DNA from: Phaeosaccion multiseriatum
Lineage: Eukaryota; Protista; Ochrophyta, other classes
Reading direction: 5' to 3'
NCBI GenBank assembly: GCA_965112735.1
Contig: OZ218950.1
Location: forward strand, 372,001-436,000
DNA: 64,000 nucleotides
Shown here: one piece after another, positions 1,650 through 64,000 of the stretch
Layout: each line of letters starts with the position of its first letter
How positions within the stretch are numbered: position 1 is the first letter of the stretch
Notes under the pieces: model-generated
Told to the model about the DNA's origin: nothing
Seen by the model: only the letters and a program-made list of their open reading frames with translations
Databases searched by the model: none
Translations under genes and position numbers: made by a program

Positions 1650-2031
1650 ATAAACGGAAACGGAAACTAAATCGCATGTTCCTGGGCTCCTCCCTTCTTC
1701 CCATCCCTAACTTCAGACGGTGGCGCGGACTTGTTGGAAGCGTTCGAGTTGGCGTAACAAGCATTCGTTTGGTTCTCGAGTACCCTGGTGTCGTTACCAC
1801 TTGGGCCAGGCGCTTGGGAACCCCCTTATGTCTTCAGACTGAAGCATTCAATTTTCACTCCTCGTCAGGATTAGTAAGACCCTGTTTCTCAGGTGGATCG
1901 AGAGAGACAGTGAAAGAGCAGACGCAGTGGATGGACTTGAAGCCCCTTATGCCCTAAGTTGGATTTGGACCTGTTGAAGAAACGCAAAGGAGGTGCAAGG
2001 AGGATTGTTTGAAGGGCGCGGAGTTGTGAAA

Positions 2032-3333
2032 ATGCGGAAGAAGTGTACTGTGGAGGGGTGCGACAAGTATCGTGTCAGAGGAGGACTTTGCGTTAGGCAC
2101 GGGGCTGTGGTGAAGAGGTGTACTGTTGAGGGGTGCGACAAGCATCGGGTCCAAGGAGGACTTTGCCTGGCCCACGGGGCTGTGGTGAAGAGGTGTACTG
2201 TTGAGGGGTGCGAGAAGCACCAGATCCAAGGAGGACTTTGCCAGGGTCATGGAGCTGTGAAGGTACGGAAGAGGTGTACTGTTGAGGGGTGCGACAAGCA
2301 TCGGGTCCAAGGAGGACTTTGCCTGGCCCACGGGGCTGTCATGAAGGGGTGTACTGTTGAGGGGTGCGACAAGCAGCGAGTCCAAGGAGGACTTTGCCAG
2401 GCCCACGGGGCTGTGGTGGTACCGAAAAGGTGTACTGTTGAGGGGTGCGAGAAGCAGTCGCAACAGGGAGGACTTTGCCTGGGCCACGGGGCTGTGGTGG
2501 TACGGAAGAGGTGTACTGTTGAGGGGTGCGAGAAGCATTCGCAACAGGGAGGACTTTGCCAGGCCCATGGAGCTGTGGTGAAGAGGTGTACTGTTGAGGG
2601 GTGCGAGAAGTATCCGCAACAAGGAGGACTTTGCAAGGGCCACGGGGCTGTGGTGAAGAGGTGTACTGTTGAGGGGTGCGATAAGGAGCGGAAGCAAGGT
2701 GGGATGTGCCTGAGGCATGCACGAGTGAAGAGAGAGGGAGCGGAAGAGAAGGAGGAGATTGCCCTTTGTACGCCTGTGCCCAAGCGAGGAGCTGCGACGG
2801 ACATCAACGGGAGAGGAAGGAAGAGGGCGAAATGCGCCCCTTCAATGCCTGGCGGAGGGGAGGAGAGGAAGGAGGCACTGGAGGATGGGAATGGGGTGGG
2901 TTTGCTTGCGGGGCTGAGGCTTCATGTCGGGGACGAGATTCAACTGCCCTGTGGCCTGTGGAGAGGGCTGGAAGATGGCGGGGCTGATGCTGCCACGGCC
3001 TTCTGCGGCCGTCGGGACAGGGAGCTGTCGAATGGCGTGGTGGTGGCTGTGGGCCGGAGTAAAGTGTTGCTGCTGCCCCACCTCGCTGTGCGCACAAAGA
3101 GGAAGGGGGCGAGCCTGGAGAGCACGATCCGAGGCTTTGTGTCTGCCTACCACCGCTATCGCTCAGGAGGAACAGGGGGGGATGATGATGGCGACAAGCT
3201 GAAGGAGGAGTGGGCGGTGCTGGAGGAGAGCATGGTGACGGCGAGTGAGAAGAAGAGGCGCGGACGGAAAGCGCTGCGAGCGTGCGTGCGTGTGGAGGGC
3301 CCTGCTGCTGATACCTCGGGACTTGGGATTTAG
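2032..3333 (+). CDS. Tandem CCCH zinc-finger (WRKY19-like repeat) protein, 9 repeats plus conserved C-terminal domain
   Basis: Nine 25/27-aa repeats C-x4-C-x9-C-x2-H. ATG at 2032 within ORF 1993-3333. Basic NLS-like segments (GRGRKRAK, KKRRGRK). Frame is intact. Confidence 0.85.
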   Translation: MRKKCTVEGCDKYRVRGGLCVRHGAVVKRCTVEGCDKHRVQGGLCLAHGAVVKRCTVEGCEKHQIQGGLCQGHGAVKVRKRCTVEGCDKHRVQGGLCLAHGAVMKGCTVEGCDKQRVQGGLCQAHGAVVVPKRCTVEGCEKQSQQGGLCLGHGAVVVRKRCTVEGCEKHSQQGGLCQAHGAVVKRCTVEGCEKYPQQGGLCKGHGAVVKRCTVEGCDKERKQGGMCLRHARVKREGAEEKEEIALCTPVPKRGAATDINGRGRKRAKCAPSMPGGGEERKEALEDGNGVGLLAGLRLHVGDEIQLPCGLWRGLEDGGADAATAFCGRRDRELSNGVVVAVGRSKVLLLPHLAVRTKRKGASLESTIRGFVSAYHRYRSGGTGGDDDGDKLKEEWAVLEESMVTASEKKRRGRKALRACVRVEGPAADTSGLGI

Positions 3334-3683
3334 TGACCCGATGGCCTTAATCCGCAGTGATGCTTGGCACGTGCAATGGGCGAACCGTAGAGATGTCAAT
3401 TAAAGTGAATTGCCCCACTCGCCGCACACTGTGCTTCACTGCGGGGGGGGGGGGGGGGGCGAACGAATGGTTTTAACATTCACAATGGACTTGGCAGCCT
3501 ACGGGCACGCTGTGTGTGTCACTTGGCGCTGGAGCTGCAGAGATGACTTGGCACGACATCGGTTACAGGTATAGAAGGAAGGCTTGATGGTAGATGGATG
3601 GCACACAGAATCCGAGGAGGGGGCTTGAAGTGACTTGAAGATCGGGGGGGTGGGGGGGGGTGGGGGGAGAGGATCAGTGTATG

Positions 3684-5453: not shown

Positions 5454-7292
5454 CTAAGGCCCAGAAGTTGCGAATGAACTGCAAAGATCACACCCACAAG
5501 CCCCACCGTACATCTTGCTGGCGGACTGGCTCTCTGGAATGAGCTCGCCGTTGCGATTGCGCTTCCTGGGTCGCTTCTCGGTATCGGGCACGGCGCAAGT
5601 CTTCTTCGTCCCTTCTGTGTGCACGCTCACGCCACCCCTCCGAGCCTCTTGATAATGCCCGCACGTCTTGCACATCTTAAAGGCCCTCTTCCGCCGTGGT
5701 TCATCGGGAAGTGTGGCCGGTTGACCACTGGCACCGCTATCAGGCACGCGTCCTCCCTGCGAAGAGAGGGAAGAGACTTGCTCCCGCAGGGTGCACGCCT
5801 CGGCGCTACTCGTAGCCGCAGCCGCAGCAGTTGCTGCTACCAAAGGCACAGGCCCCTCTCTCAGCCGCCTCTGCTGCTCGAGCTGTCCTGGCGATGGGCA
5901 CGTCGGCTGTGGCTCTAAGAGGGAGTTGGCGAACTCCTCCCCAGGCGCAGGCCGCCTCAAGTCCCTTCTCAGCATGGCCCCCTGCTGAAATATCGGCTTC
6001 ACAGTGGCCTTCGCGTTCATCCTCCTCTTCAGCAGGTCATAGTGCTGGTGCAGATGCGCGCTCGTCTTGCGGAAAACGTTGCTCCACTTGCCCAGTCCTT
6101 TCTCTACGTCCTTGCAGCCCTCGTTCCAGTTGCAAGCCCAGCAGTCTAAGTCGATCGCACCATGCTTGATGTTCGCGTCGACTCGCTCCTGCACGCTCTT
6201 CACGTAGGCCCGCTGCCACGGAGACCACCCTCTGATAGCTTCTTCCTCATCATCCAGGCCGCCACCACGGCTCCCTGAGGTATTGCGTGTCTGCTGTGCC
6301 CGTCTTGAAGCGGAAGAAGTGCTGGCTGCTGCTGTTGCTGCTGTCTCTGCCACGGATACCGCTGCTGCTGCTGCTGCTGCTGTCTCGGCAGCTGCCTCTG
6401 CGGAGCTTTCTGCTGGAGGGACGGAGGGGGGAGGGAGAGAGGGAGCGACATCAATTCCTACGGGCGTCTTATACTTCTCTCCTACGCCTCTCTTCCCATG
6501 CTCCCTCCCCTCCAAAAAGGAGGCTTTCTCTCTCACCCACCCACCTGCCTGCATGATGAGCTGCGTGACGTGATGCCTCTCCTGCAGATGCCTGCCCTCG
6601 GCGCCAGCCGCAGCTGCTCCCCCTCCTGCTCCCCCTCCTACTGAGCTATGTGCCGGTGTCTCTCTTGCTGGTGCTTCCTTGGCGCCAGGCGCAGCTGCTC
6701 CCCCTCCTACTGAGCTATCTGCCGGTGTCTCCCTTGCTGATGCTTCCTTGGCGCAAGCAGCAGCTGCTTCGGCGTGTGGGACGGGCGGAGTAGACGTCTT
6801 TGCTGGTGCTACCGATGGCAGTGGAGAGCCCACAACTGTGACCCCTCCCTCCTCAGAGCTACCTGCAAATACAAATCCCCTCTTGGCCCAACTATCCCGA
6901 TTTTTGTCGACCGTTTCCTTGCGTACAGGACCCGGCTTTGCACTTCCCTTCGCGCTCTTGCTCCCTACGGGTCGTCCTCGCCGCCTCTTTACTGCCTCAG
7001 CAGTCTTCTTTGCCTGCGCTGCAGCTCCATTCACCTTGTTGGAAGTGTTCTTGCTCCCTCGCCGACGTCCTAGCCCCCTCTTTTCCTTCGCAGGTGGAGC
7101 TACAGCAGAAGCAGCAGCAGGAGCAGCAGCGACAGCAGCAGCAAAACCAGCAGTGCGTGCGATGTAGGGGTTAAAAGGCCTTCGTGCTGCTGCTGATACT
7201 GATGCTGATGCTGTCACCGATGATACCGCTGCTGCGACGGGTGCTGGTGGGGCTGTAGAGCCCTCTAAAGCATGCATTGCTTCATGCTCCAT
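5454..7292 (-). CDS. 612-aa transposon-associated protein: AT-hook-like N-terminus, low-complexity middle, C-terminal Cys/His cluster; no catalytic core visible
   Basis: Long ATG ORF. RRRGRPVGSK AT-hook-like motif. C-terminal CKTCGH..H..C..CGCDLC. Lies inside the fold-back element. Confidence 0.55.
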   Translation of the reverse strand: MEHEAMHALEGSTAPPAPVAAAVSSVTASASVSAAARRPFNPYIARTAGFAAAVAAAPAAASAVAPPAKEKRGLGRRRGSKNTSNKVNGAAAQAKKTAEAVKRRRGRPVGSKSAKGSAKPGPVRKETVDKNRDSWAKRGFVFAGSSEEGGVTVVGSPLPSVAPAKTSTPPVPHAEAAAACAKEASARETPADSSVGGGAAAPGAKEAPARETPAHSSVGGGAGGGAAAAGAEGRHLQERHHVTQLIMQAGGWVREKASFLEGREHGKRGVGEKYKTPVGIDVAPSLPPPSVPPAESSAEAAAETAAAAAAAVSVAETAATAAASTSSASRRAQQTRNTSGSRGGGLDDEEEAIRGWSPWQRAYVKSVQERVDANIKHGAIDLDCWACNWNEGCKDVEKGLGKWSNVFRKTSAHLHQHYDLLKRRMNAKATVKPIFQQGAMLRRDLRRPAPGEEFANSLLEPQPTCPSPGQLEQQRRLREGPVPLVAATAAAAATSSAEACTLREQVSSLSSQGGRVPDSGASGQPATLPDEPRRKRAFKMCKTCGHYQEARRGGVSVHTEGTKKTCAVPDTEKRPRKRNRNGELIPESQSASKMYGGACGCDLCSSFATSGP

Positions 7293-7596: not shown

Positions 7597-8415
7597 AGCC
7601 GTGGTGGCGGCCTGGATGATGAGGAAGAAGCTATCAGAGGGTGGTCTCCGTGGCAGCGGGCCTACGTGAAGAGCGTGCAGGAGCGAGTCGACGCGAACAT
7701 CAAGCATGGTGCGATCGACTTAGACTGCTGGGCTTGCAACTGGAACGAGGGCTGCAAGGACGTAGAGAAAGGACTGGGCAAGTGGAGCAACGTTTTCCGC
7801 AAGACGAGCGCGCATCTGCACCAGCACTATGACCTGCTGAAGAGGAGGATGAACGCGAAGGCCACTGTGAAGCCGATATTTCAGCAGGGGGCCATGCTGA
7901 GAAGGGACTTGAGGCGGCCTGCGCCTGGGGAGGAGTTCGCCAACTCCCTCTTAGAGCCACAGCCGACGTGCCCATCGCCAGGACAGCTCGAGCAGCAGAG
8001 GCGGCTGAGAGAGGGGCCTGTGCCTTTGGTAGCAGCAACTGCTGCGGCTGCGGCTACGAGTAGCGCCGAGGCGTGCACCCTGCGGGAGCAAGTCTCTTCC
8101 CTCTCTTCGCAGGGAGGACGCGTGCCTGATAGCGGTGCCAGTGGTCAACCGGCCACACTTCCCGATGAACCACGGCGGAAGAGGGCCTTTAAGATGTGCA
8201 AGACGTGCGGGCATTATCAAGAGGCTCGGAGGGGTGGCGTGAGCGTGCACACAGAAGGGACGAAGAAGACTTGCGCCGTGCCCGATACCGAGAAGCGACC
8301 CAGGAAGCGCAATCGCAACGGCGAGCTCATTCCAGAGAGCCAGTCCGCCAGCAAGATGTACGGTGGGGCTTGTGGGTGTGATCTTTGCAGTTCATTCGCA
8401 ACTTCTGGGCCTTAG
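7597..8415 (+). pseudogene. Inverted duplicate of the 3' part (~270 codons) of the 612-aa ORF
   Basis: ORF 7666-8415 is identical in peptide to the C-terminus of 5454-7292 and lacks its 5' end. Confidence 0.85.
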
Positions 8416-9326
8416 GGAAGCCAAGAAAGTGAAAATAAAGGGGGGGCAAAGCTCTTTGCATGTTGTTCATCCACTAGCTAGTCGCCAGTTGAGGTGGGGG
8501 AATTTGAATTTAATTGGCTGGCCCTTCGGGCCAGCCCTATTAGCACGATATTCGCCCATCCCTTCTTCCCATCTCCCCATCTTCCCCCCTCCCTGACTTC
8601 AGACGGCGGCGCGGACTTGTTGGAAGCGTTCGAGTTGGCGTAACAAGCATTCGTTTGGTTCTCGAGTACCCTGGTGTCGTTACCACTTGGGTCAGGCGCT
8701 TGGGAACGCCATTATGTCTTCAAACTGAAGCATTCAATTTTCACTCCTCGTCAGGATTAATAAGACCCTGTTTCTCAGGTGGATCGAGAGAGACAGTGAA
8801 AGAGCAGACGCAGTGGATGGACTTGAAGCGCGTTATGCCCTAAGTTGGATTTGGACCTGTTGAAGAAACGCAAAGGAGGTGCAAGGAGGATTGTTTGAAG
8901 GGCGCGGAGTTGTGAAAATGCCGAAAAAGTGTACTGTGGAGGGGTGCGACAAACAGCCGAAGCAGGGAGGACTTTGCGTTGGGCACGGAGCTGTGCTGAA
9001 GAGGTGTACTGTTGAGGGGTGTAACAAGCAGCGGCTGCAAGGAGGACTTTGCGTTGGGCATGGGGCTGTGCTGAAGAGGTGTACTGTTGAGGGGTGCGAG
9101 AAGCAGCGGATCCAAGGAGGACTTTGCGTTGGGCATGGACCTGTGCTGAAGAGGTGTACTGTGGAGGGGTGCGAGAAGCATTCGAAACAGGGAGGACTTT
9201 GCGTTGGGCACGGGGCTGTGGTGAAGAGGTGTACTGTTGAGGGTTGCGAGAAGCAGTCGAAACAAGGAGGACTTTGCCAGGGCCATGGGGCTGTGGTGAA
9301 GAAGTGTACTGTGGAGGGGTGCGAGA

Positions 9327-11610
9327 TGTATATTAGAGCTTATGGGCTCAGTATTGGAGCGCTCGAGGTAAGTTGTAACCATGTGTAGATGCGTGTATGT
9401 GTGGTATTGATGGAGCGTGAGGTGGAGGGGAAGAGGATGGTAAGGGTGGTAGAGTAGAGGATAATGGGGAATGGGAAGGGAGTGAAGGGGGAGGAGGAGA
9501 TGAAGGGGTGTGGGAAGGAGTGAGGTGGTGGAGGTGATATGTGAACTAGCCTACTGTGGGTGGTGCGGGTGACAAGGCGTGACTAACTGTGGTTGCTATG
9601 CTGTGTGCTGATGGTCTCGCTGTCTGCTGGCTGGTGTACTCCTGCTCCTCAGGCGGCCGCTCCGTCGATGGCTCCCATGAGCCCCCAGTCGAGGGTTTCT
9701 GCTGCTTCGTGCTGCGTCATGGTGGCTCGAAGGAGGGTGCCATACCTGATCTCCCGCTGTGAGAGGGCGCGTTGAAGGGCGAGGGACAGTTGTTGGCGCA
9801 GGAGGCCCTTGATGGGGCCCGTGGCTGCCGCCGCTGCGGGGCCGAGCCCTCTTGATGCCTTGTGGATGGCCATCGCCTCGATGAGCTCGTCCGTTTGGTG
9901 GCCCAGTCTGCCGTACGTCTCGATTGCAATGCACTTCAGGGTTGAAGTCCCGGGCAGAAAACTGCCCAGGTAGTGGGTGCGCTTGCGTTCTTCGGCGGCG
10001 GCTGCTGCGTGGCCTGGCGTGGTGGAGGCCCGTCCCACGTGAGTGGGGGCGGTGGGGTTGGTGACGGTGATGTCGCAGAGGAGGTTTCTCCGCAGGGGTG
10101 CGTCCGCTCCCGGGAAGCTACCTGCGGGATAGGTCAGGTCCATGCGTAGGTCTCGGCCTGCTCGGGTGCCCGTGGGGCCGTCGAAGCAGGTCTGGTCCTC
10201 TACACGTGCTCCTCCAATGCCCACGCTGTGCATCATCCTCCCGAAGGCCTTGACGAGGAGGTGGTGTGTGTGGTTGTGGAGGCCGGTGCGGGGGCAGATG
10301 GTGGCGTGGGTAGTGCTTGCCGTGCGGGCGCAGCCTGTGCCAAGGCAGGGTGGGGGCGGGTCCGCGTATGGCGTGTTGACACCGAGGTTGCGACGAAGGG
10401 CCATGGTCCATTCTGCGGGGGCCATGGTGTTGTGGCCGTGGGGGAGCGCTCCGAGGAAGGCCATGGCGCCCCTTCCTCGCTGTGAGTGGAGTCGGGCTGT
10501 TGCCATTTCCTGTGTCTCCTCTCCCCTCTGTGCCTCTGCCGGTGTGACGTCGATGGTGGCGATGCTCTGCGTCAGCTCCTCATGGCGGCGTTTGTGGATG
10601 AAGGTGGTGAGGGCCTTCTGGACGCCGTGGGTCGGTTGACGGCCTGCCTGATGGCTCCTGCGCACGTTGCGTCGCGCTGTGTCCTGGGCTTGGTGGTCAG
10701 GCGGCTCGAGTACGCGTGAGCGGGCCTCGTCGAACTGTGCCTGACCCACTGCTTGGATGAGGGGGGCCTCAGGGACCCCCTCCTCGTGCAGGAGGTTGAC
10801 GCTGTCGGCGACGCTCTTGAGGGCTCCGTTGGTGAACAGCTGGTCCGGTAGGGCGCTCTCTTGGGAGCCTTCCCGGCGTGCGGTGCGGCTGAGCAGGGGG
10901 GGGAGGGTGAGCATCTTGTTGCCAAGGTATGCTGCTGGGGCGATGTCGTGGAGGCTGGTGAGGCCGAGGCCGCCGAAGCGCCGTGCCGTATGCATTTGTA
11001 GGCGCTGTGTCTCCGTCCATGGCTCCTCTTGTGCATCTGCGGCCTGCTCCAGAGGGGGGGCATCGGGGAGTCGCATGATGTGGGCCATTGTCGCTCTGTT
11101 GGTGCGGTCTGCCCTGCTGCCGAGGGCGCGTCGGAAGATGGAGGGGTCAATGGCTCTCGCCAGGTGTGTGAGCCTGGCTGGGAGGCATTGGAGGAGGACG
11201 AGGGTGGCCGCCTGGGTGTTGTCCCACTCGCTGCAGTGTTTGGCGAGTTGGAGGTAGCCCCTGGGGTCTTCTTGGCCGAGGATGTTGCGGAGGTACTCTT
11301 CGATGTACTCCTCCGTGCCGACGGGGATGCCGGCTACCACGGTACCCTCGGTGGCAAGTGTGGCGCCCTGCCGTTGGGCGTGGTCCCTGTCAGCCTGTGT
11401 TGGCTGCTTGCCTTTGCCCATGAGGTAAACCGTTTTCCTCTCGTTGAACTCGAGGCCCAAGCCTCGGAATTGGGCTTGGAGATGGGCATGGCGTGGGGCG
11501 TAGGTCTGTAGGGGTGCGTCGGGTTCCAGCTGGTCCATGAGGTCGTCTGCGTAGGCGGAGATGGTGGGGCGGTTCGCTGCGGTGTCGGCTGTGTTCTGAA
11601 CTTTCAGCAC
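9327..11610 (-). mobile_element. 5'-truncated non-LTR retrotransposon with restriction-like endonuclease (CRE-like)
   Basis: TSD TGCGAGA at 9320-9326 and 11611-11617. Encodes the RT C-terminal half, a zinc knuckle and an RLE domain. The ~320-bp 3' UTR is C-rich on the sense strand and has no poly(A). Confidence 0.9.
9649..11610 (-). CDS. Partial RT-zinc knuckle-RLE ORF of the retrotransposon
   Basis: ISAYADDL (RT catalytic motif), ARRFGGLGL, CLGTGC...HATIC (CCHC), RMDL..CDITVTNP..AEERKRTHY..IAIETYGRLG (PD-(D/E)xK RLE). Uninterrupted frame to the stop at 9649. Confidence 0.9.
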   Translation of the reverse strand: MLKVQNTADTAANRPTISAYADDLMDQLEPDAPLQTYAPRHAHLQAQFRGLGLEFNERKTVYLMGKGKQPTQADRDHAQRQGATLATEGTVVAGIPVGTEEYIEEYLRNILGQEDPRGYLQLAKHCSEWDNTQAATLVLLQCLPARLTHLARAIDPSIFRRALGSRADRTNRATMAHIMRLPDAPPLEQAADAQEEPWTETQRLQMHTARRFGGLGLTSLHDIAPAAYLGNKMLTLPPLLSRTARREGSQESALPDQLFTNGALKSVADSVNLLHEEGVPEAPLIQAVGQAQFDEARSRVLEPPDHQAQDTARRNVRRSHQAGRQPTHGVQKALTTFIHKRRHEELTQSIATIDVTPAEAQRGEETQEMATARLHSQRGRGAMAFLGALPHGHNTMAPAEWTMALRRNLGVNTPYADPPPPCLGTGCARTASTTHATICPRTGLHNHTHHLLVKAFGRMMHSVGIGGARVEDQTCFDGPTGTRAGRDLRMDLTYPAGSFPGADAPLRRNLLCDITVTNPTAPTHVGRASTTPGHAAAAAEERKRTHYLGSFLPGTSTLKCIAIETYGRLGHQTDELIEAMAIHKASRGLGPAAAAATGPIKGLLRQQLSLALQRALSQREIRYGTLLRATMTQHEAAETLDWGLMGAIDGAAA

Positions 11611-13474
11611 TGCGAGAAGCAGCGGGTCCAAGGAGGACTTTGCATTGGGCACGGAGCTGTGCTGAAGAAGTGTACTGTGGAGGGGTGCGACAAGCAGCGG
11701 GTCCAAGGAGGACTTTGCGTTGGGCATGGGGCTGTGCTGAAGAGGTGTACTGTTGAGGGGTGCGAGAAGCAGCGGGTCCAAGGAGGACTTTGCGTTGGGC
11801 ATGGAGCTGTGCTGAAGAGGTGTACTGTTGAGGGGTGCGACAAGCACCAGATCCAAGGAGGGCTTTGCAAGGGCCATGGAGCTGTGGTGAAGGTGTGTAC
11901 TGTTGAGGGGTGCGACAAGCAGCGGGTCCAAGGAGGACTGCCAGAGCCATGGAGCTGTGAGGAAGAGGTGTACTGTTGAGGGGTGTGATAAGTATCCGAA
12001 GCAAGATGGGATGTGCCTGAGGCATGCACGAGTGAAGAGGGAGGGAGCGGAAGAGAAGGAGGAGATTGCCCGTTGTATGCCTGTGCCCAAGCGAGGAGCT
12101 GCGGAGGACATCAATGGGAGAGGAAGCAAGAGGGCGAAATGCGCCCCTTCAATGCCTGGGGGAGAGGAGGAGAGGAAGGAGGCACTGGAGGATGGGAATG
12201 GGGTGGGTTTGCTTGTGGGGCTGGGGCTTCATGTCGGGGACGAGATTCAGCTGCCCTGTGGCCTGTGGAGAGGGCTGGAAGATGGCTGGGCTGATGCTGC
12301 CACGGCCTTCTGCGGCCGTCGGGACAGGGAGCTTTCGAATGGCGTGGTGGTGGCTGTGGAGCGGAGTAAAGTGTTGCTGCTGCCCCACCTCGCTGTGCGC
12401 ACAAAGAGGAAGGGGGCGAGCCTGGAGAGCACGATCCGAGGCTTTGTGTCTGCCTACCACCGCTGTCGCTCAGGAGGAGCAGGGGAGGATGATGATGACG
12501 ACAAGCTGAAGGAGGAGTGGGCGGTGCTGGAGGAAAGCATGGTGACGGCGAGTGAGAAGAAGAGGCGCGGGCGGAAGGCGCTGCGAGCGTGCGTGCGTGT
12601 GGAGGGCCCTGCTGCTGATACCTCGGGGCTTGGGATTTAGTGACCCGATGGCCTTCCGTCCGCCGCATCGCCTTCGCCGTGGTGAAGCTTGAAGCGTGGT
12701 TCGTGGAACGGGTGAAAAAAAAGTAGAGTGAGTAAGGCCTCTGCCGAAGAGCAACCATCGGCTATCGCAGTGCATCGCCTTTCAGGGCAGGGCAGCAGCC
12801 CAAGCACCGAGAGAGAGAGAGACACACATCGATGTCGACATTCACCTTCTGACAGACATGTCGAGGGTGCCGAGAGACTTGTCGGCATGTGGGCCCCTCT
12901 GGGACACTGTGGGCTGCTCCTGGGGCTGCTGTATCACCATTTGCTGCTGTTTCTGTGGCTGGGGCTGCTGTATCACCAACTGCTGCTGTTTCCGTGGCTG
13001 GGGCTGCTGCCCAGTGTCACGTCGTTCTGTGAACGCTTTTGCGATGCATTCATTGCGGTGCAGTGTGCGGCTGTGGAGGGACAATTGGGGTTTCTCCTTA
13101 CTGATTTAGAGTAATGTGCTGGAAAACGTAACTGACACTTGGAGAAGACCCTCAAGTCTACGATTTCCCCCTCTGGTTCCGTCAGTGCTGTAAACAAAAG
13201 GCTTGCTACTCACCCCCTCGCATACGTCCTTCCTCTCCTCTCCTCTCCTCTCCCCCCCTCTATCTACTGTCACTACACAGCCGCTCACTTCTGTAGTGCC
13301 CGAGAAGGCGCTTCCTTCACCTTCTCTCCTGCCTGCTCTCTCCCCTCCTAATTGCAGTGTCCCTCCCTCACGACGCCTGTCCCCTGTCCCCTATCCGTCG
13401 GTCTGTCGGTCTGTCTGTCGGGCGGTCCCCTTCCGCCGCTGCCTTGTGGGCGAGCCCACAAGTAAAGCAAACAT

Positions 13475-61364: not shown

Positions 61365-64000
61365 GAGGGCTGAGAGCAAAGACATGAATACACGAATACA
61401 CAGTGGAGAGAGAGAAGAGAGGAAGGAGAGGAAAAAGGATGGCAAGAGCACCCGACTGGTGTTGAGAGAGGGGGGTCAGGGGGGTCAACAGAGATCCCAG
61501 AGGTGGTGGAGTGGAGTGGTGTGGTGTGAAGAGAGGAGAGGCATCCACCCTCTTGACTAGTTAGGCTCGTGCAGTGGAGTGGAGGCTTGGAGGCTCTATT
61601 GGAGTGGAGACGTGGAGTTGAGTGAGTTGGAGAGGAGTGGGGTAAAGTGGGGTGATGTGCAGAGAGGAGACGAGTCCACCACGCCTGACTTTGCGGCCAT
61701 GCCTGGACTTGAGTCCTCTCTTCACACACACACACACACACACACACACGGGGCAGGGCTGCAGTCGACACGAGAGGGAGTGCAATCAATCAATCAATCC
61801 ATACACTTATCATTAAGTTAGCTTACGTACCCCATCCCCCCAGCGGGCCTCGTCTTCAAGTCACTTCCAAGCCCCCTCCTCGGATTCTGTGTGCCATCCA
61901 TCTACCATCAAGCCTTCCTTCTATACCTGTAGCCGATGTCGTGCCAAGTCATCTCTGCAGCTCCAGCGCCAAGTGACACACACAGCGTGCCCGTAGGCTG
62001 CCAAGTCCATTGTGAATGTTGAAACCATTCGTTCCCCCCCCCCCCCCCCGCAATGAAGCACAGTGTGTGGCGAGTGGGGCAATTCACTTCAATTGACTTA
62101 CTCTACGGTTCGCCCATTGCACGTGCCAAGCTTCACTGCGGATTAAGGCCATCGGGTCACTAAATCCCAAGTCCCGAGGTATCAGCAGCAGGGCCCTCCA
62201 CACGCACGCACGCTCGCAGCGCTTTCCGTCCGCGCCTCTTCTTCCCACTCGCCGTCACCATGCTCTCCTCCAGCACCGCCCACTCCTCCTTCAGCTTGTC
62301 GTCATCATCATCCTCCCCTGCTCCTCCTGAGCGATAGCGGTGGTAGGCAGACACAAAGCCTCGGATCGTGCTCTCCAGGCTCGCCCCCTTCCTCTTTGTG
62401 CGCACAGCGAGGTGGGGCAGCAGCAACACTTTACTCCGGCCCACAGCCACCACCACGCCATTCGATAGCTCCCCGTCCCGACGGCCGCACAAGGCCGTGG
62501 CAGCATCAGCCCCGCCATCTTCCAGCCCTCTCCACAGGCCACAGGGCAGTTGAATCTCGTCCCCGACATGAAGCCCCAGCCCCGCAAGAAAACCCACCCC
62601 ATTCCCATCCTCCAGTGCATCCTTCCTCTCCTCCCCTCCCCCAGGCATTGAAGGGGCGCATTTTGCCCTCTTTCTTCCTCTCCCATTGATGTCCTCCGCA
62701 GCTCCTCGCTTGGGCACAGACGTACACGGGCCAGTCTCCTCCTTCTGCTCCGCCCCCTCCCTCTTCATTCGTGCATGCCTATGGCACATCCCACCTTGCT
62801 GCCGATGCTTCTCGCACCCCTCAACAGTACACCTCTTCACCACAGCACCGTGCCCAAGGCAAAGTCCTCCTTGGACCCGATGGTTGTTACACCCCTCAAC
62901 AGTACACCTCTTCTGTACCACCACAGCCCCGTGGGCCAGGCAAAGTCCTCCTTGGATCCGCTTCTTCTCGCACCCCTCCACAGTACACCTCTTCAGCACA
63001 GCCCCATGCCCAACGCAAAGTCCTCCTTGGATCCGTTGCTTCTCGCACCCCTCAACACTACATCTCTTCAGCACAGCTCCGTGCCCAACGCAAAGCCCTC
63101 CTTGGACCTGCCCCTTCCCGCACCCCTCCACAGTACACCTCTTCCGCATTTTCACAACTCCGCGCCCTTCAAACAATCCTCCTTGCACCTCCTTTGCGTT
63201 TCTTCAACAGGTCCAAATCCACCTTAGGGCATAAGGGGCTTCGAGTCCATCCACTGCGTCTGCTCTTTCACTGTCTCTCTCGATCCACCTGAGAAATAGG
63301 GTCTTATTAATCCTGACGAGGAGTGAAAATTGAATGCTTCAGTCTGAAGACATAAGGAGGTTCCCAAGCGCCTGGCCCAAGTGGTAACGACACCAGGGTA
63401 CTCGAGAACCAAATGAATGCTTGTTACGCCAACTCGAACGCTTCCAACAAGTCCGCGCCGCCGTCTGAAGTCAGGGAGGGGGAAGATGGGAAGATGGGAA
63501 GAAGGGAGGAGCCCAGGAACATGCGATCTAGTTTCAGTTTCCGTTCATTGGCCCGAGCCTTGTTGCCCCCTTTGCTAATCCCCCTGTGACACCGGGAGTG
63601 GAAGGGACAGTTTGTGCAAAACACGTACGATAGCAGTGAGGCGAGAGTGAATTATCGAAATTAAAGGCTTAACGGCTTATGTGCCACCTGAGAGGTGGGC
63701 GAGGAAAGAGGAGGGAAAGGCCCATCACCATCAAGGAGCATACGAGCAATTCTTAAGCTAAGCTCTACCTCTGATGCTCCCTTCCATCTGCCCAGTCTGA
63801 CGAGCCTGCACCTCATGGAAGGCTTGCCATTGCCAGCACCGGTGCTGATGCCCCTCCCCTCCCCCCTGCCGCACCGCACCAGCTACAACGCGCTGCTGAC
63901 GACAAGCGCCAAAAACAAAGCACTTGCTGCTTTCTAATCCCCCACCAGCTACTGCTGCTGCGTCTGCAGTTGTTGCTCGCTGCTGCTGCGATTGGTCTTA
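61365..64000 (-). repeat. Zinc-finger-array repeat unit, copy 3 (inverted, insertion-free, runs off the window)
   Basis: Reverse complement matches 4811-5328 and 1228-4158. Confidence 0.9.
62160..63149 (-). CDS. Tandem CCCH zinc-finger (WRKY19-like repeat) protein, 5 repeats plus the same C-terminal domain
   Basis: Intact ORF with ATG at 63149. C-terminal ~190 aa nearly identical to copy 1. Confidence 0.85.
   Translation of the reverse strand: MRKRCTVEGCGKGQVQGGLCVGHGAVLKRCSVEGCEKQRIQGGLCVGHGAVLKRCTVEGCEKKRIQGGLCLAHGAVVVQKRCTVEGCNNHRVQGGLCLGHGAVVKRCTVEGCEKHRQQGGMCHRHARMKREGAEQKEETGPCTSVPKRGAAEDINGRGRKRAKCAPSMPGGGEERKDALEDGNGVGFLAGLGLHVGDEIQLPCGLWRGLEDGGADAATALCGRRDGELSNGVVVAVGRSKVLLLPHLAVRTKRKGASLESTIRGFVSAYHRYRSGGAGEDDDDDKLKEEWAVLEESMVTASGKKRRGRKALRACVRVEGPAADTSGLGI

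What the first reader, a model, noticed from the sequence alone, without database searches (positions are those of the whole stretch)
2032..2720. Modular zinc-finger arrays with fixed scaffold and hypervariable positions: candidate repeat-coded (TALE/ZF-like) recognition system
Seen: three paralogues share near-identical flanks and C-terminal domain but carry 9, 11 and 5 repeats of 75/81 bp. The scaffold CTVEGC-(D/E)K-xxx-QGGLC-xx-HGAV is almost invariant. Change concentrates in one patch (YRV, HRV, HQI, QRV, QSQ, HSQ, YPQ, ERK, QPK, QRL, QRI, HSK, QSK, YPK, GQV, KRI, HRQ) and one dipeptide (VR, LA, QG, QA, LG, KG, VG, IG). The same patches recur in different order between copies (HQI is repeat 3 in copy 1 and repeat 9 in copy 2; HRV is repeats 2/4 in copy 1 and repeat 4 in copy 3). 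Known: C-x4-C-x9-C-x2-H WRKY19-like repeats occur in plants and stramenopiles, with largely unknown function. Inference: repeat shuffling plus selection on polar/basic residues would suit a re-programmable nucleic-acid-binding array, for example TE-recognising repressors analogous to KRAB-ZFPs or PRDM9.
Basis: partly seen in the sequence, partly recalled or inferred. Interest (0 to 1): 0.8.

Follow-up and report, generated by a model that had tools for sequence, protein, structure and literature searches.

The report
Reshuffled zinc-finger-array gene family
Three neighbouring genes (two intact, one broken by a jumping gene) belong to a family of at least 65 young gene copies in an alga-like eukaryote. 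Each copy encodes 4-11 copies of a little-studied zinc finger with a frozen frame and about seven freely changing positions, which fits a modular binder, probably of DNA or RNA, although neither binding nor expression is shown.

Summary
Copy 1 (2032-3333, +) has 9 fingers. Copy 2 (8918-12640, +) has 11. Copy 3 (63149-62160, -) has 5. All share flanks and a 205-aa tail.

The finger is Pfam Zf_WRKY19 (E 1.5e-51), so the domain is known, but no function has been reported for it. Copy 2 is broken by a 2.3-kb retroelement and a 2-nt deletion.

The genome holds at least 65 full-length copies in tandem clusters. Across 166 fingers, change is concentrated at positions 7, 9, 10, 11, 17, 18 and 23. The codon-model dN/dS ratio (omega) is 0.085 for the frame and 1.1-1.4 for the variable sites, and the latter is not distinguishable from 1. 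Diversifying selection is therefore not shown; a frozen frame around free sites is.

Arrays are mosaics drawn from an old, limited pool of finger types. Genes whose tails differ by 1.3% carry unrelated arrays.

The arrays are basic (pI 9.2), and a bipartite-NLS-like motif follows them. The tail has no homologue elsewhere, but it also ends other proteins of this genome.

My best reading is modular recognition of a nucleic acid, comparable in its evolution to KRAB zinc-finger genes (confidence about 0.45). No RNA data exist for this organism.

The scan had already reported this family on other DNA of the same genome (s1-360297, s1-336308).

The parts
1650..2031 (+). Conserved 5' leader or promoter region of copy 1, shared with copies 2 and 3 and with loci L002 and L021 ('type A' flank).
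   Evidence: blastn finds 88-89% identity to 8576-8917 and to 63548-63150. Alignment of upstream sequences shows two flank subfamilies.
2032..3333 (+). Copy 1: an intact, intronless gene of 433 aa with 9 fingers, a linker and a tail.
   Evidence: The ORF is given. It matches Pfam Zf_WRKY19 at E 1.5e-51 in 9 stretches. The genome search returns it at 100% identity.
2044..2718 (+). Copy 1 finger array: nine C-x4-C-x9-C-x2-H units of 25 or 27 aa. The last unit is the conserved terminal type (xRK/xPK triplet, Met at position 15, Arg at position 18).
   Evidence: AlphaFold2 of fingers 1-3 gives mean pLDDT 89.6.
2719..3333 (+). Linker plus lineage-specific C-terminal tail (205 aa). It contains a KR-x11-KRAK bipartite-NLS-like motif, an acidic run and a basic end.
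   Evidence: No Pfam hit. No homologue in two protein-database searches. 36 full-length copies at 90-96% identity lie on contig C1. Omega is 0.49 in the core of the tail.
8918..9326 (+). Copy 2, 5' part: start codon, fingers 1-5 and the first 7 codons of finger 6.
9327..11610 (-). 5'-truncated non-LTR retroelement inserted antisense in finger 6 of copy 2. It is flanked by the 7-bp duplication TGCGAGA (9320-9326 and 11611-11617).
   Evidence: An RT-like ORF with a YADD motif lies on the minus strand. The junctions are shown. Copies 98-99% identical sit in five other family loci. The cut site is identical at 8 junctions.
11611..12640 (+). Copy 2, 3' part: the rest of finger 6, fingers 7-9, finger 10 with a 2-nt deletion between 11939 and 11940 (frameshift), terminal finger 11 and the tail. 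This copy is a pseudogene.
   Evidence: Searches show the frame changing between 11821 and 11969. The tail is 94% identical to that of copy 1.
62160..63149 (-). Copy 3: an intact gene of 329 aa with 5 fingers and the tail.

Best explanation
**What it is (shown)**
- These are three members of a young, tandem-clustered, intronless gene family in a eukaryote, probably a stramenopile alga.
- Each gene encodes a basic protein with three parts: an N-terminal array of 4-11 Zf_WRKY19 Cys3His fingers, a short linker with a bipartite-NLS-like motif, and a 205-aa tail found only in this genome.
- Within each 25-residue finger, 16 positions are frozen by strong purifying selection. About seven positions (7, 9, 10, 11, 17, 18, 23) change at roughly the neutral rate.
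- Variability peaks at 7, 9 and 11 and dips at 8, 10 and 12. That alternation is what one exposed face of the beta-strand after the zinc knuckle would give.
- Arrays are mosaics of an old, limited pool of finger variants. Seven triplets make up 68% of fingers.
- Arrays change by duplication or deletion of whole units and by short-tract exchange between units, while the tail stays nearly identical between genes.

**How it most likely works (inferred, not shown)**
- The array acts as a modular reader of a linear polymer, most likely DNA or RNA.
- Each finger would contribute one recognition element through the variable face. The invariant frame and the Lys-Arg linker would give generic contacts.
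- The shared tail would serve as the common effector or partner-binding part.
- In evolutionary behaviour this parallels KRAB-type C2H2 finger clusters, but the finger is a different one.
For: **Domain identity and fold**
- Pfam PF24906, E 1.5e-51, 9 stretches.
- The three-finger model has pLDDT 89.6. Its best shape match is a diatom Zf_WRKY19 cluster at TM 0.71.

**Family size**
- 136 matches to the tail, about 65 of them full length without stops: 36 on C1 (84-770 kb), 13 on C8, 12 on C13 and a few on C2.
- At least 909 candidate finger units genome-wide.

**Concentrated variation**
- Amino-acid entropies per position.
- Pairwise Nei-Gojobori pN/pS is 1.2 at variable sites and 0.13 in the frame.
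- The maximum-likelihood codon model gives omega 1.11-1.36 at variable sites and 0.085 in the frame.
- Frame codons such as V3, C6, Q12, H19 and G20 carry many synonymous changes and almost no replacement changes (none at V3, C6, H19 and G20).
- In the wider family, positions 3, 12, 22 and 24 vary freely. The frame here is therefore tighter than the fold itself requires.

**Strand-face pattern**
- dN relative to the global dS is 1.21, 1.54 and 2.34 at positions 7, 9 and 11, against 0.09, 0.80 and 0.32 at positions 8, 10 and 12.
- DSSP places beta-bridges at positions 9, 12 and 15.

**Mosaic arrays**
- For 136 of 138 fingers, the closest relative lies in another gene.
- Variable patches are linked to neighbouring synonymous markers (Cramer's V 0.64-0.79) but only weakly to each other.
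- Genes whose tails differ by 1.3-1.5% in DNA have unrelated arrays.
- Synonymous difference between fingers is about 0.32, against 0.047 between tails.
- The same triplets (QSQ, QSR, QSK, KRV) recur in the C13 cluster, whose tail differs at dS 0.46.

**The genes are maintained**
- All 26 tails sampled from the C1 cluster are open. The chance of that under neutral substitution is about 6e-6.

**Signs of a nuclear, nucleic-acid role**
- The copy 1 array has pI 9.2 and 40 K+R against 19 D+E.
- The KR-x11-KRAK motif is read directly from the sequence.
- The tail also ends proteins with HTH-like modules or lone fingers.
- There is a Pfam CxC6 (KDZ-transposase cysteine cluster) hit above its cut-off on the same residues.
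Against: - No binding data exist for any Zf_WRKY19 finger. Two literature searches found nothing on the domain.
- Omega at the variable sites cannot be told from 1. Those sites may simply be unconstrained.
- No RNA run is on record for this organism. The four runs that hold the sequence cover genes and spacers alike, so expression is unshown.
- The tail is only weakly constrained, with pairwise dN/dS 0.5-0.85, and it folds poorly in AlphaFold2 (pLDDT under 50).
- At least a fifth of the sampled copies (7 of 33) carry this retroelement, and in all about a third look disrupted.
- Neither Foldseek nor the wide VIA-align search found a significant match to a solved structure. The only tight local fits are to A20-type fingers, which bind ubiquitin.
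- I could not obtain model coordinates, so whether positions 17, 18 and 23 share a surface with 7, 9 and 11 is untested.
Confidence: 0.45

Rival explanations
1. There is no code. The variable positions are simply the few surface residues that this tiny zinc knuckle tolerates changing. The family would be a young, partly decaying amplification whose arrays bind something generic (a polyanion, or nucleic acid without specificity) or are drifting toward loss.
For: - Omega at the variable sites is 1.1-1.4 and not distinguishable from 1. No site is significant after correction.
- Tail dN/dS is 0.5-0.85.
- About a third of the sampled copies are interrupted or truncated.
- No expression evidence exists.
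Against: - The amino-acid repertoire is narrow and old. Seven triplets cover 68% of fingers. Position 10 is Ser, Arg or Pro in about 96% of fingers. The same triplets persist in clusters whose tails differ at dS 0.46.
- Fingers within an array stay as different from each other as fingers of different genes, although the tails are homogenised.
- All 26 sampled tails are open, which has a chance of about 6e-6 under neutrality.
- Frame omega is 0.085.
Confidence: 0.22
2. The arrays are protein-binding scaffolds, for example for ubiquitin-like or other repeated protein surfaces, rather than nucleic-acid readers. The variable face would tune partner choice.
For: - The only tight local structural fits of a single finger are to A20-type fingers: A20 ZF7 with linear ubiquitin, rmsd 0.9 A over 20-25 residues, E-values not significant.
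- Treble-clef-like fingers often mediate protein contacts (general knowledge).
- Wider relatives such as the EsV-1-7 repeats have no shown DNA binding (paper 10.1101/2024.02.19.579948).
Against: - The matches have E above 1 and cover a single knuckle.
- The arrays are strongly basic and are followed by an NLS-like motif.
- The repeats are regular, with a constant Lys-Arg linker.
- A tail shared with HTH-like-module proteins fits nucleic-acid work better.
Confidence: 0.18
3. The family is a selfish or virus- or transposon-derived cargo gene that spreads as a short mobile unit. On this reading its diversity reflects the element's history, not host function.
For: - Between the two flank subfamilies, homology stops sharply about 60 nt before the ATG and 15-20 nt after the stop codon, although tail dS is only 0.05.
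- Related finger arrays occur in giant viruses, and the EsV-1-7 protein matches at E 1.9e-3.
- There is a CxC6/KDZ-transposase Pfam hit.
- The genes are intronless.
Against: - Within each subfamily the flanks are conserved for hundreds of bases. The two 3' flank types are themselves recognisably related, with indels. That fits tandem duplication plus gene conversion of the ORF.
- I saw no terminal repeats, target-site duplications or poly-A tail at the unit ends.
- The copies sit in a few tandem clusters rather than being dispersed.
Confidence: 0.08

Closest known systems
Pfam PF24906 Zf_WRKY19 (WRKY19-like zinc finger) arrays of oomycetes, diatoms, labyrinthulids and land plants
   Same: Same finger: C-x4-C-x9-C-x2-H, Gly at positions 5, 13, 14 and 20, in tandem repeats of 24-28 residues. 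Our protein scores 172 bits against a cut-off of 27. 292 array homologues were found in Phytophthora, Pythium, Aphanomyces, Skeletonema, Thalassiosira, Hondaea, Elaeis, Canna and others. The best shape match is a diatom cluster at TM 0.71.
   Different: The best outside match is only 57% identical over 69% of the array. None carries the 205-aa tail. The frame here is far more uniform than in the wider family. This genome has at least 65 near-identical tailed genes in tandem clusters. No member of the domain family has a tested function.
KRAB-C2H2 zinc-finger gene clusters and PRDM9 (animals)
   Same: The evolutionary behaviour is the same: tandem gene clusters, arrays of many short fingers with a constant linker, a frozen frame, variation confined to a few positions per finger, gain and loss of whole units, and a constant non-finger domain (established knowledge).
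   Different: The fold and ligand set differ (Cys3His knuckle-hairpin versus the beta-beta-alpha Cys2His2 finger). There is no KRAB, SCAN or SET domain. Omega above 1 at contact residues, which is documented for KZFPs and PRDM9, is not shown here. Unlike the PRDM9 minisatellite, fingers within an array are no more alike than fingers of different genes. DNA binding is unproven.
EsV-1-7 cysteine-rich repeat family (PF19114; Ectocarpus IMMEDIATE UPRIGHT, phaeovirus EsV-1-7)
   Same: Both are Cys3His repeats starting with C-x4-C and ending with C-x2-H, arranged in tandem. The gene families are expanded in tandem arrays in brown algae and their sister groups, and the biochemical role is unknown (paper 10.1101/2024.02.19.579948). 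There is a structural match to EsV-1-7 at E 1.9e-3 and to giant-virus EsV-1-7 clusters.
   Different: The EsV-1-7 loop is longer and its model spans 35 positions; from my memory of Macaisne et al. 2017, which I did not check here, the motif is C-x4-C-x16-C-x2-H-x12 with a 38-residue period. PF19114 does not hit our protein. This genome has its own separate EsV-1-7 genes, 56 motif hits at other places.
TALE, PPR and Pumilio repeat codes
   Same: Only the logic is shared: near-identical tandem modules in which a few positions differ, with module order varying between paralogues.
   Different: Those repeats use no zinc and have a helical fold, and a one-module-one-base code has been demonstrated for them. 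Nothing of that kind is tested here.
A20-type zinc finger; CxC6 cluster of KDZ transposases (PF18721)
   Same: A single finger superposes on A20 ZF7 at rmsd 0.9 A over 20-25 residues. Pairs of fingers score 37.6 bits on CxC6, whose cut-off is 27.5.
   Different: The A20 matches are not significant (E above 1), and A20 fingers are Cys4, single, and bind ubiquitin. The CxC6 hit overlaps the Zf_WRKY19 hits, and no transposase lies nearby.

Membership tests
Pfam Zf_WRKY19 (PF24906) | The profile HMM score exceeds the curated gathering threshold. | tested here: met
   172.2 bits against a 27-bit cut-off, E 1.5e-51, 9 stretches. All 150 scored units in the genome are over the cut-off.
Pfam Zf_WRKY19 (PF24906) | Cys-x4-Cys-x9-Cys-x2-His ligand spacing, with Gly at positions 5, 13, 14 and 20. 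| tested here: met
   All 23 complete fingers in the window fit this. Gly is 98-100% conserved at these positions. Ligand invariance in my larger set is by construction, because I selected units with that pattern.
Pfam Zf_WRKY19 (PF24906) | Each unit binds zinc. | not testable with these tools
Programmable repeat-coded recognition system (TALE / C2H2-array-like) | Tandem modules share a constant frame, and variation is confined to a few positions. | tested here: met
   omega is 0.085 in the frame and 1.1-1.4 at 7-9 positions.
Programmable repeat-coded recognition system (TALE / C2H2-array-like) | The variable positions form the ligand-contacting surface. | tested here: inconclusive
   The alternating 7/9/11 pattern and the beta-bridges at 9, 12 and 15 fit one strand face. 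I had no coordinates, no complex and no solved relative.
Programmable repeat-coded recognition system (TALE / C2H2-array-like) | Each module type corresponds to a base or base triplet in a nucleic-acid target. | not testable with these tools
   This needs DAP-seq, SELEX or a co-structure.
Programmable repeat-coded recognition system (TALE / C2H2-array-like) | Diversifying selection (omega above 1) acts on the recognition positions. | tested here: inconclusive
   Omega is 1.11 (2dlnL 0.4) or 1.36 (2dlnL 4.1) on sites chosen after seeing the data. The best single site is position 23, with uncorrected p = 0.015.
EsV-1-7 repeat family (PF19114) | The protein matches the PF19114 profile (the longer C-x4-C ... 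C-x2-H unit). | tested here: not met
   There is no PF19114 hit at E up to 1. The loop is 9 residues and the period 25. The genome's PF19114 hits lie elsewhere.
KRAB-ZFP / PRDM9 | C2H2 fingers plus a KRAB or PR/SET domain. | tested here: not met
   Pfam finds no zf-C2H2, KRAB or SET domain.

The most novel reading that the evidence does not exclude
Zf_WRKY19 arrays would be a previously unrecognised class of programmable nucleic-acid readers. Positions 7, 9 and 11 (plus 17 and 18) of each 25-residue finger would specify one element of the target, so that the roughly 65 reshuffled genes form a rapidly evolving repertoire. That repertoire would be locked in a conflict with mobile DNA, including the retroelement that lands only in fingers with Glu at position 7.
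Probability: 0.2. Interest if true: 0.85.

Novelty: new variant of a known kind. Interest (0 to 1): 0.55.

Why it matters
Zf_WRKY19 fingers occur by the hundreds in oomycete pathogens, diatoms and plants, yet no function has been tested for them. This family is a natural experiment. It offers dozens of near-identical proteins that differ almost only in the order and identity of a few finger types.

Binding assays on two or three members, for example copy 1 against copy 3, or arrays with swapped fingers, could show directly whether the finger reads DNA or RNA and whether a per-finger code exists.

If a code exists, this would be an independently evolved counterpart of the animal KRAB-zinc-finger system in an alga, and a possible new scaffold for designed binders. 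If no specific binding is found, the family still shows how concerted evolution can keep one half of a gene uniform while the other half stays diverse.

Tried and rejected
**Fold and homology of the 205-aa tail**
- Full-length AlphaFold2 of copy 3 gave pLDDT under 50 across the tail, so I attempted no fold search on it.
- Pfam, the word-indexed search of 5.8 billion proteins, the exhaustive HMMER search of 1.84 billion representatives and the ESM Atlas feature search all came back empty.
- The single weak hit, P0121, is a repetitive 886-aa protein and tells us nothing.

**Solved-structure relatives of the finger**
- The PDB sequence search found nothing.
- Foldseek against the PDB gave nothing at E up to 0.001.
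- The VIA-align wide search gave no Z of 2 or more.

**Pfam side hits**
- The Beta_helix hit (44 bits) is rejected as an artefact of Gly-rich periodic repeats, because the three-finger model shows separate knuckles.
- The Pacifastin hit is rejected because it falls below its curated cut-off.

**Expression**
- No RNA run is on record.
- The four runs that hold the sequence are contigs covering genes and spacers alike. Summed depth over the ORF is 100-300 times that of unique flank, which fits a multi-copy family but is not a copy number.

**Positive selection**
- Pairwise counting, an ML codon model with a likelihood-ratio test, and the per-site tree count of changes all fail to show omega significantly above 1.

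**Mobility of the gene unit**
- The sharp homology ends turned out to separate two flank subfamilies, each conserved internally.

**The 'WT.EEEEY' module of tail-bearing proteins**
- Only weak HTH hints (E 0.006-0.07) and nothing in the PDB.

**Literature**
- Nothing was found on the Zf_WRKY19 domain itself. The CxC6/KDZ search gave nothing relevant to algae.

**Model coordinates**
- Coordinates are not exposed by the tools, so I could not map the variable residues in three dimensions.
Full report
**1. What is in the window**

A six-frame scan for C-x4-C-x9-C-x2-H, the ORF lists and the raw sequence show three paralogous genes.

- Copy 1 (2032-3333, +) is an intact 433-aa ORF with nine fingers at 2044-2718.
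- Copy 3 (63149-62160, -) is an intact 329-aa ORF with five fingers.
- Copy 2 (8918-12640, +) has eleven fingers but is broken in two ways.
  - Finger 6 is split by a 2,284-bp antisense retroelement fragment (9327-11610). The fragment carries a YADD reverse-transcriptase ORF and is flanked by the 7-bp duplication TGCGAGA.
  - Finger 10 lacks two bases between 11939 and 11940, which shifts the frame.

The recurring fingers really are the same units. The two HQI fingers are 93% identical in DNA against a background of 82%, and the two HRV fingers of copy 1 are identical.

**2. What the finger is**

Pfam assigns the repeats to Zf_WRKY19 (PF24906; 172 bits, cut-off 27; nine stretches).

A search with the array finds 292 homologues, all annotated only as hypothetical or 'WRKY19-like zinc finger domain-containing' proteins. 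They come from oomycetes, diatoms, a labyrinthulid and land plants.

I found no paper on the domain.

AlphaFold2 of fingers 1-3, using an alignment of 50 three-finger segments, gives pLDDT 89.6. Each unit has a zinc knuckle, single beta-bridges at positions 9, 12 and 15, and the Cys-x2-His turn.

- The nearest predicted structure is a diatom Zf_WRKY19 cluster (TM 0.71).
- Weaker relatives are the EsV-1-7 repeats of phaeoviruses and giant viruses, and fingers in phage HNH and EndoVII nucleases.
- No solved structure matches significantly. The tightest local fits are to A20-type fingers, with rmsd 0.9 A over 20-25 residues and E above 1.

**3. The family in the genome**

The window is G000:C1:372001-436000, in a 67-Mb assembly of 22 contigs.

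The 205-aa tail has 136 matches, of which about 65 are full length without stops:

| Contig | Position | Full-length copies | Identity to copy 1 tail |
|---|---|---|---|
| C1 | 84-770 kb | 36 | 90-96% |
| C8 | 1.45-2.26 Mb | 13 | 72-79% |
| C13 | 3.02-3.17 Mb of a 3.33-Mb contig | 12 | 64-67% |
| C2 | several places | a few | about 60-71% |

The Pfam model finds at least 909 candidate finger units genome-wide, some of them in other, larger ORFs. Finger numbers in sampled genes range from 4 to 11.

The tail has no homologue in a word-indexed search of 5.8 billion proteins or in an exhaustive HMMER search of 1.84 billion cluster representatives. Pfam and the ESM Atlas also give nothing.

Inside this genome, the same tail (33-48% identity) also ends other proteins:

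- four proteins on C13, which carry one to three copies of a roughly 95-aa 'WT.EEEEY...' module with weak HTH hints, two of them with one or two lone fingers as well;
- one protein on C2, which has two fingers and a long acidic run.

The tail therefore looks like a lineage-specific module joined to different putative binding modules.

**4.

I extracted 166 complete fingers (130 of 25 codons, 36 of 27 codons) from 33 gene copies.

Amino-acid entropy:

| Positions | Entropy |
|---|---|
| 7, 9, 10, 11, 17, 18, 23 | 1.4-2.6 bits |
| 2, 25 | about 1 bit |
| all others | 0-0.4 bits (up to 0.8 in the 27-residue units) |

dN/dS estimates:

| Method | Variable codons | Frame codons |
|---|---|---|
| Pairwise Nei-Gojobori pN/pS | 1.2 | 0.13 |
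| Goldman-Yang model on the ML tree of 114 distinct units | 1.11 (seven codons), 1.36 (nine codons) | 0.085 (sixteen codons) |

- Fixing omega at 1 costs 2dlnL of 0.4 for seven codons and 4.1 for nine codons.
- In a count of synonymous and nonsynonymous changes inferred along the finger tree, per-site dN/dS is 0.6-3.4 at the variable positions and 0-0.3 in the frame. The best site is position 23 at p = 0.015, before correction for 25 tests.

Two caveats apply. The variable sites were picked because they vary. Exchange between units also violates the tree model.

The conclusion is that variation is very unevenly spread and the frame is under strong purifying selection. Frame codons carry many synonymous changes and almost no replacement changes. 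Diversifying selection, however, is not demonstrated. The variable sites behave as roughly unconstrained.

**5. Evidence that the variable sites are not simply drifting**

- The repertoire is narrow. Seven triplets (QSQ, QRV, HRV, QRI, VRV, QSK, QSR) cover 68% of the distinct fingers. Position 10 is Ser, Arg or Pro in about 96% of fingers.
- The same triplets recur in the C13 cluster, whose tail differs from the C1 tails at dS 0.46.
- Positions 3, 12, 22 and 24 vary freely in the wider Zf_WRKY19 family but are frozen here.
- Variability alternates. It is high at 7, 9 and 11 and low at 8, 10 and 12, as expected for one face of the strand that follows the knuckle.
- Fingers within an array are no more alike than fingers of different genes: 83% for neighbours, against 82% both for other pairs in the same array and for fingers of different genes. 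For 136 of 138 fingers the closest relative sits in another gene.
- Genes whose tails differ by only 1.3-1.5% in DNA carry unrelated arrays. Synonymous difference between fingers (about 0.32) far exceeds that between tails (0.047).

Together these say that an old pool of finger types is kept diverse while the rest of the gene is homogenised.

Association analysis shows each variable patch tightly linked to the neighbouring synonymous markers (Cramer's V 0.64-0.79). The patches at 9-11 and 17-18 are only weakly linked to each other. Short-tract exchange therefore re-assorts sub-finger patches, in addition to gain and loss of whole units. Examples of unit gain and loss are L006 against L012 and L009 against L024.

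**6. Are the genes alive?**

- All 26 sampled C1 tails are open. With 4-21 substitutions per copy, the chance of that under neutrality is about 6e-6.
- Tail omega is 0.49 in the core, and 0.71 in the linker and 0.85 in the last 55 residues of the tail. Constraint is moderate to weak.
- About a third of sampled copies are truncated or interrupted.
- No RNA run exists for this organism. The four runs that hold the sequence cover genes and spacers alike and so look like DNA.

Expression is therefore unknown.

**7. Flanks**

Homology between most copies stops about 60 nt before the ATG and 15-20 nt after the stop codon. That first suggested a mobile unit.

Alignment of the flanks shows two subfamilies instead. 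Each is conserved for hundreds of bases, and their 3' flanks are distantly related to each other. With tail dS of only 0.05, this points to tandem duplication plus gene conversion confined to the ORF, not to transposition.

**8. Mechanism**

These points are shown:

- the domain identity, the family size and its clustering;
- the frozen frame with free positions;
- the mosaic arrays and the homogenised tail;
- the basic charge of the arrays: pI 9.2, with 40 K+R against 19 D+E in copy 1.

These points are inferred:

- nuclear localisation, from a KR-x11-KRAK motif that fits the classical bipartite NLS consensus;
- modular recognition of a linear polymer, most likely DNA or RNA, through the 7/9/11 face together with 17/18;
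- generic contacts from the invariant frame and the Lys-Arg linker;
- a common effector or partner role for the tail.

I put this reading at about 0.45. The rivals are given with their evidence in the Rival explanations section:

| Rival | Confidence |
|---|---|
| No code: unconstrained surface residues in a partly decaying family | 0.22 |
| Protein-binding scaffold (A20-like) | 0.18 |
| Selfish or virus-derived cargo gene | 0.08 |

**9. Comparison with what is known**

This is a member of the Zf_WRKY19 domain family. The profile score and the ligand spacing were tested and met.

It is not an EsV-1-7 family member. PF19114 does not hit it, and the genome has separate EsV-1-7 genes.

It behaves like KRAB-C2H2 clusters but is not one, because it has no C2H2, KRAB or SET domain.

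The new elements are the lineage-specific tail, the size and youth of the family, and the quantified frame-versus-variable contrast. The scan has already reported the same family on two other stretches of this genome (s1-360297, s1-336308), with similar readings. My results agree with them on the pattern. They are more cautious on selection.

**10. Link to mobile DNA**

The retroelement in copy 2 has 98-99% identical copies in five other family loci from three clusters.

All eight junctions I could read lie at the same base, after GGGTG[C/T]GA[G/A]A. That is inside codon 8 of a finger whose position 7 is Glu. Glu fingers are 37% of all fingers, so eight of eight has a chance of about 3e-4.

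Fingers with Asp, Asn or Gln at position 7 lack the target sequence. Part of the variation at position 7 may therefore reflect exposure to this element. This supports the earlier notes on the element (s1-350131, s1-338480). It is the only TE connection I could show.

**11. Verdict**

| Item | Verdict |
|---|---|
| Observation | confirmed |
| Novelty | new variant of a known kind |
| Interest | 0.55 |

Noticed in passing
window 9320-9326 and 11611-11617; L004, L017, L021, L028, L030 (three times): All eight readable junctions of the finger-targeting retroelement lie at the same base, after GGGTG[C/T]GA[G/A]A. Each falls in a finger with Glu at variable position 7, and none in a finger with Asp, Asn or Gln (chance about 3e-4). 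The Asp/Glu choice at position 7 may therefore decide whether a finger can be hit.
   Followed up: partly
L031 (G000:C13:567000-572500), L032, L033, L034, L035 (G000:C2:5708000-5711500): The 205-aa tail of the family (33-48% identity) also ends other large proteins. Four proteins on C13 carry 1-3 copies of a roughly 95-aa 'G.WT.EEEEYAAAII.HF' module with weak HTH hints, two of them with one or two lone fingers as well. A fifth protein, on C2, has two fingers and a long acidic run.
   Followed up: partly
window 1650-2031 and 3334-3480, compared with loci L003 and L006-L013: The family has two flank subfamilies. ORFs differ by about 5% at synonymous sites across subfamilies, while the flanks are barely alignable between them. 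This implies gene conversion limited to the ORF.
   Followed up: partly
window 5454-7292 (-) and 7666-8415 (+): A 612-aa ORF rich in Ala and Pro, ending in a Cys-rich segment, lies between copies 1 and 2. Its C-terminal 249 codons are repeated in inverted orientation about 370 bp away.
   Followed up: no
G000, many places (for example C1:4970361-4970906 and C1:1732601-1733614): The genome has a separate EsV-1-7 (PF19114) repeat family, with 56 motif hits over the cut-off. It is distinct from the Zf_WRKY19 family.
   Followed up: no
window 3436-3453: A run of about 18 G lies roughly 100 nt downstream of the stop codon in all 'type A' copies (copy 1, copy 3, L002, L007, L021).
   Followed up: no
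L030 (G000:C8:2257123-2261196): Three separate 3' ends of the same retroelement sit within 1.2 kb of finger-coding DNA. Repeated hits have turned part of an array into a nest of element fragments.
   Followed up: no
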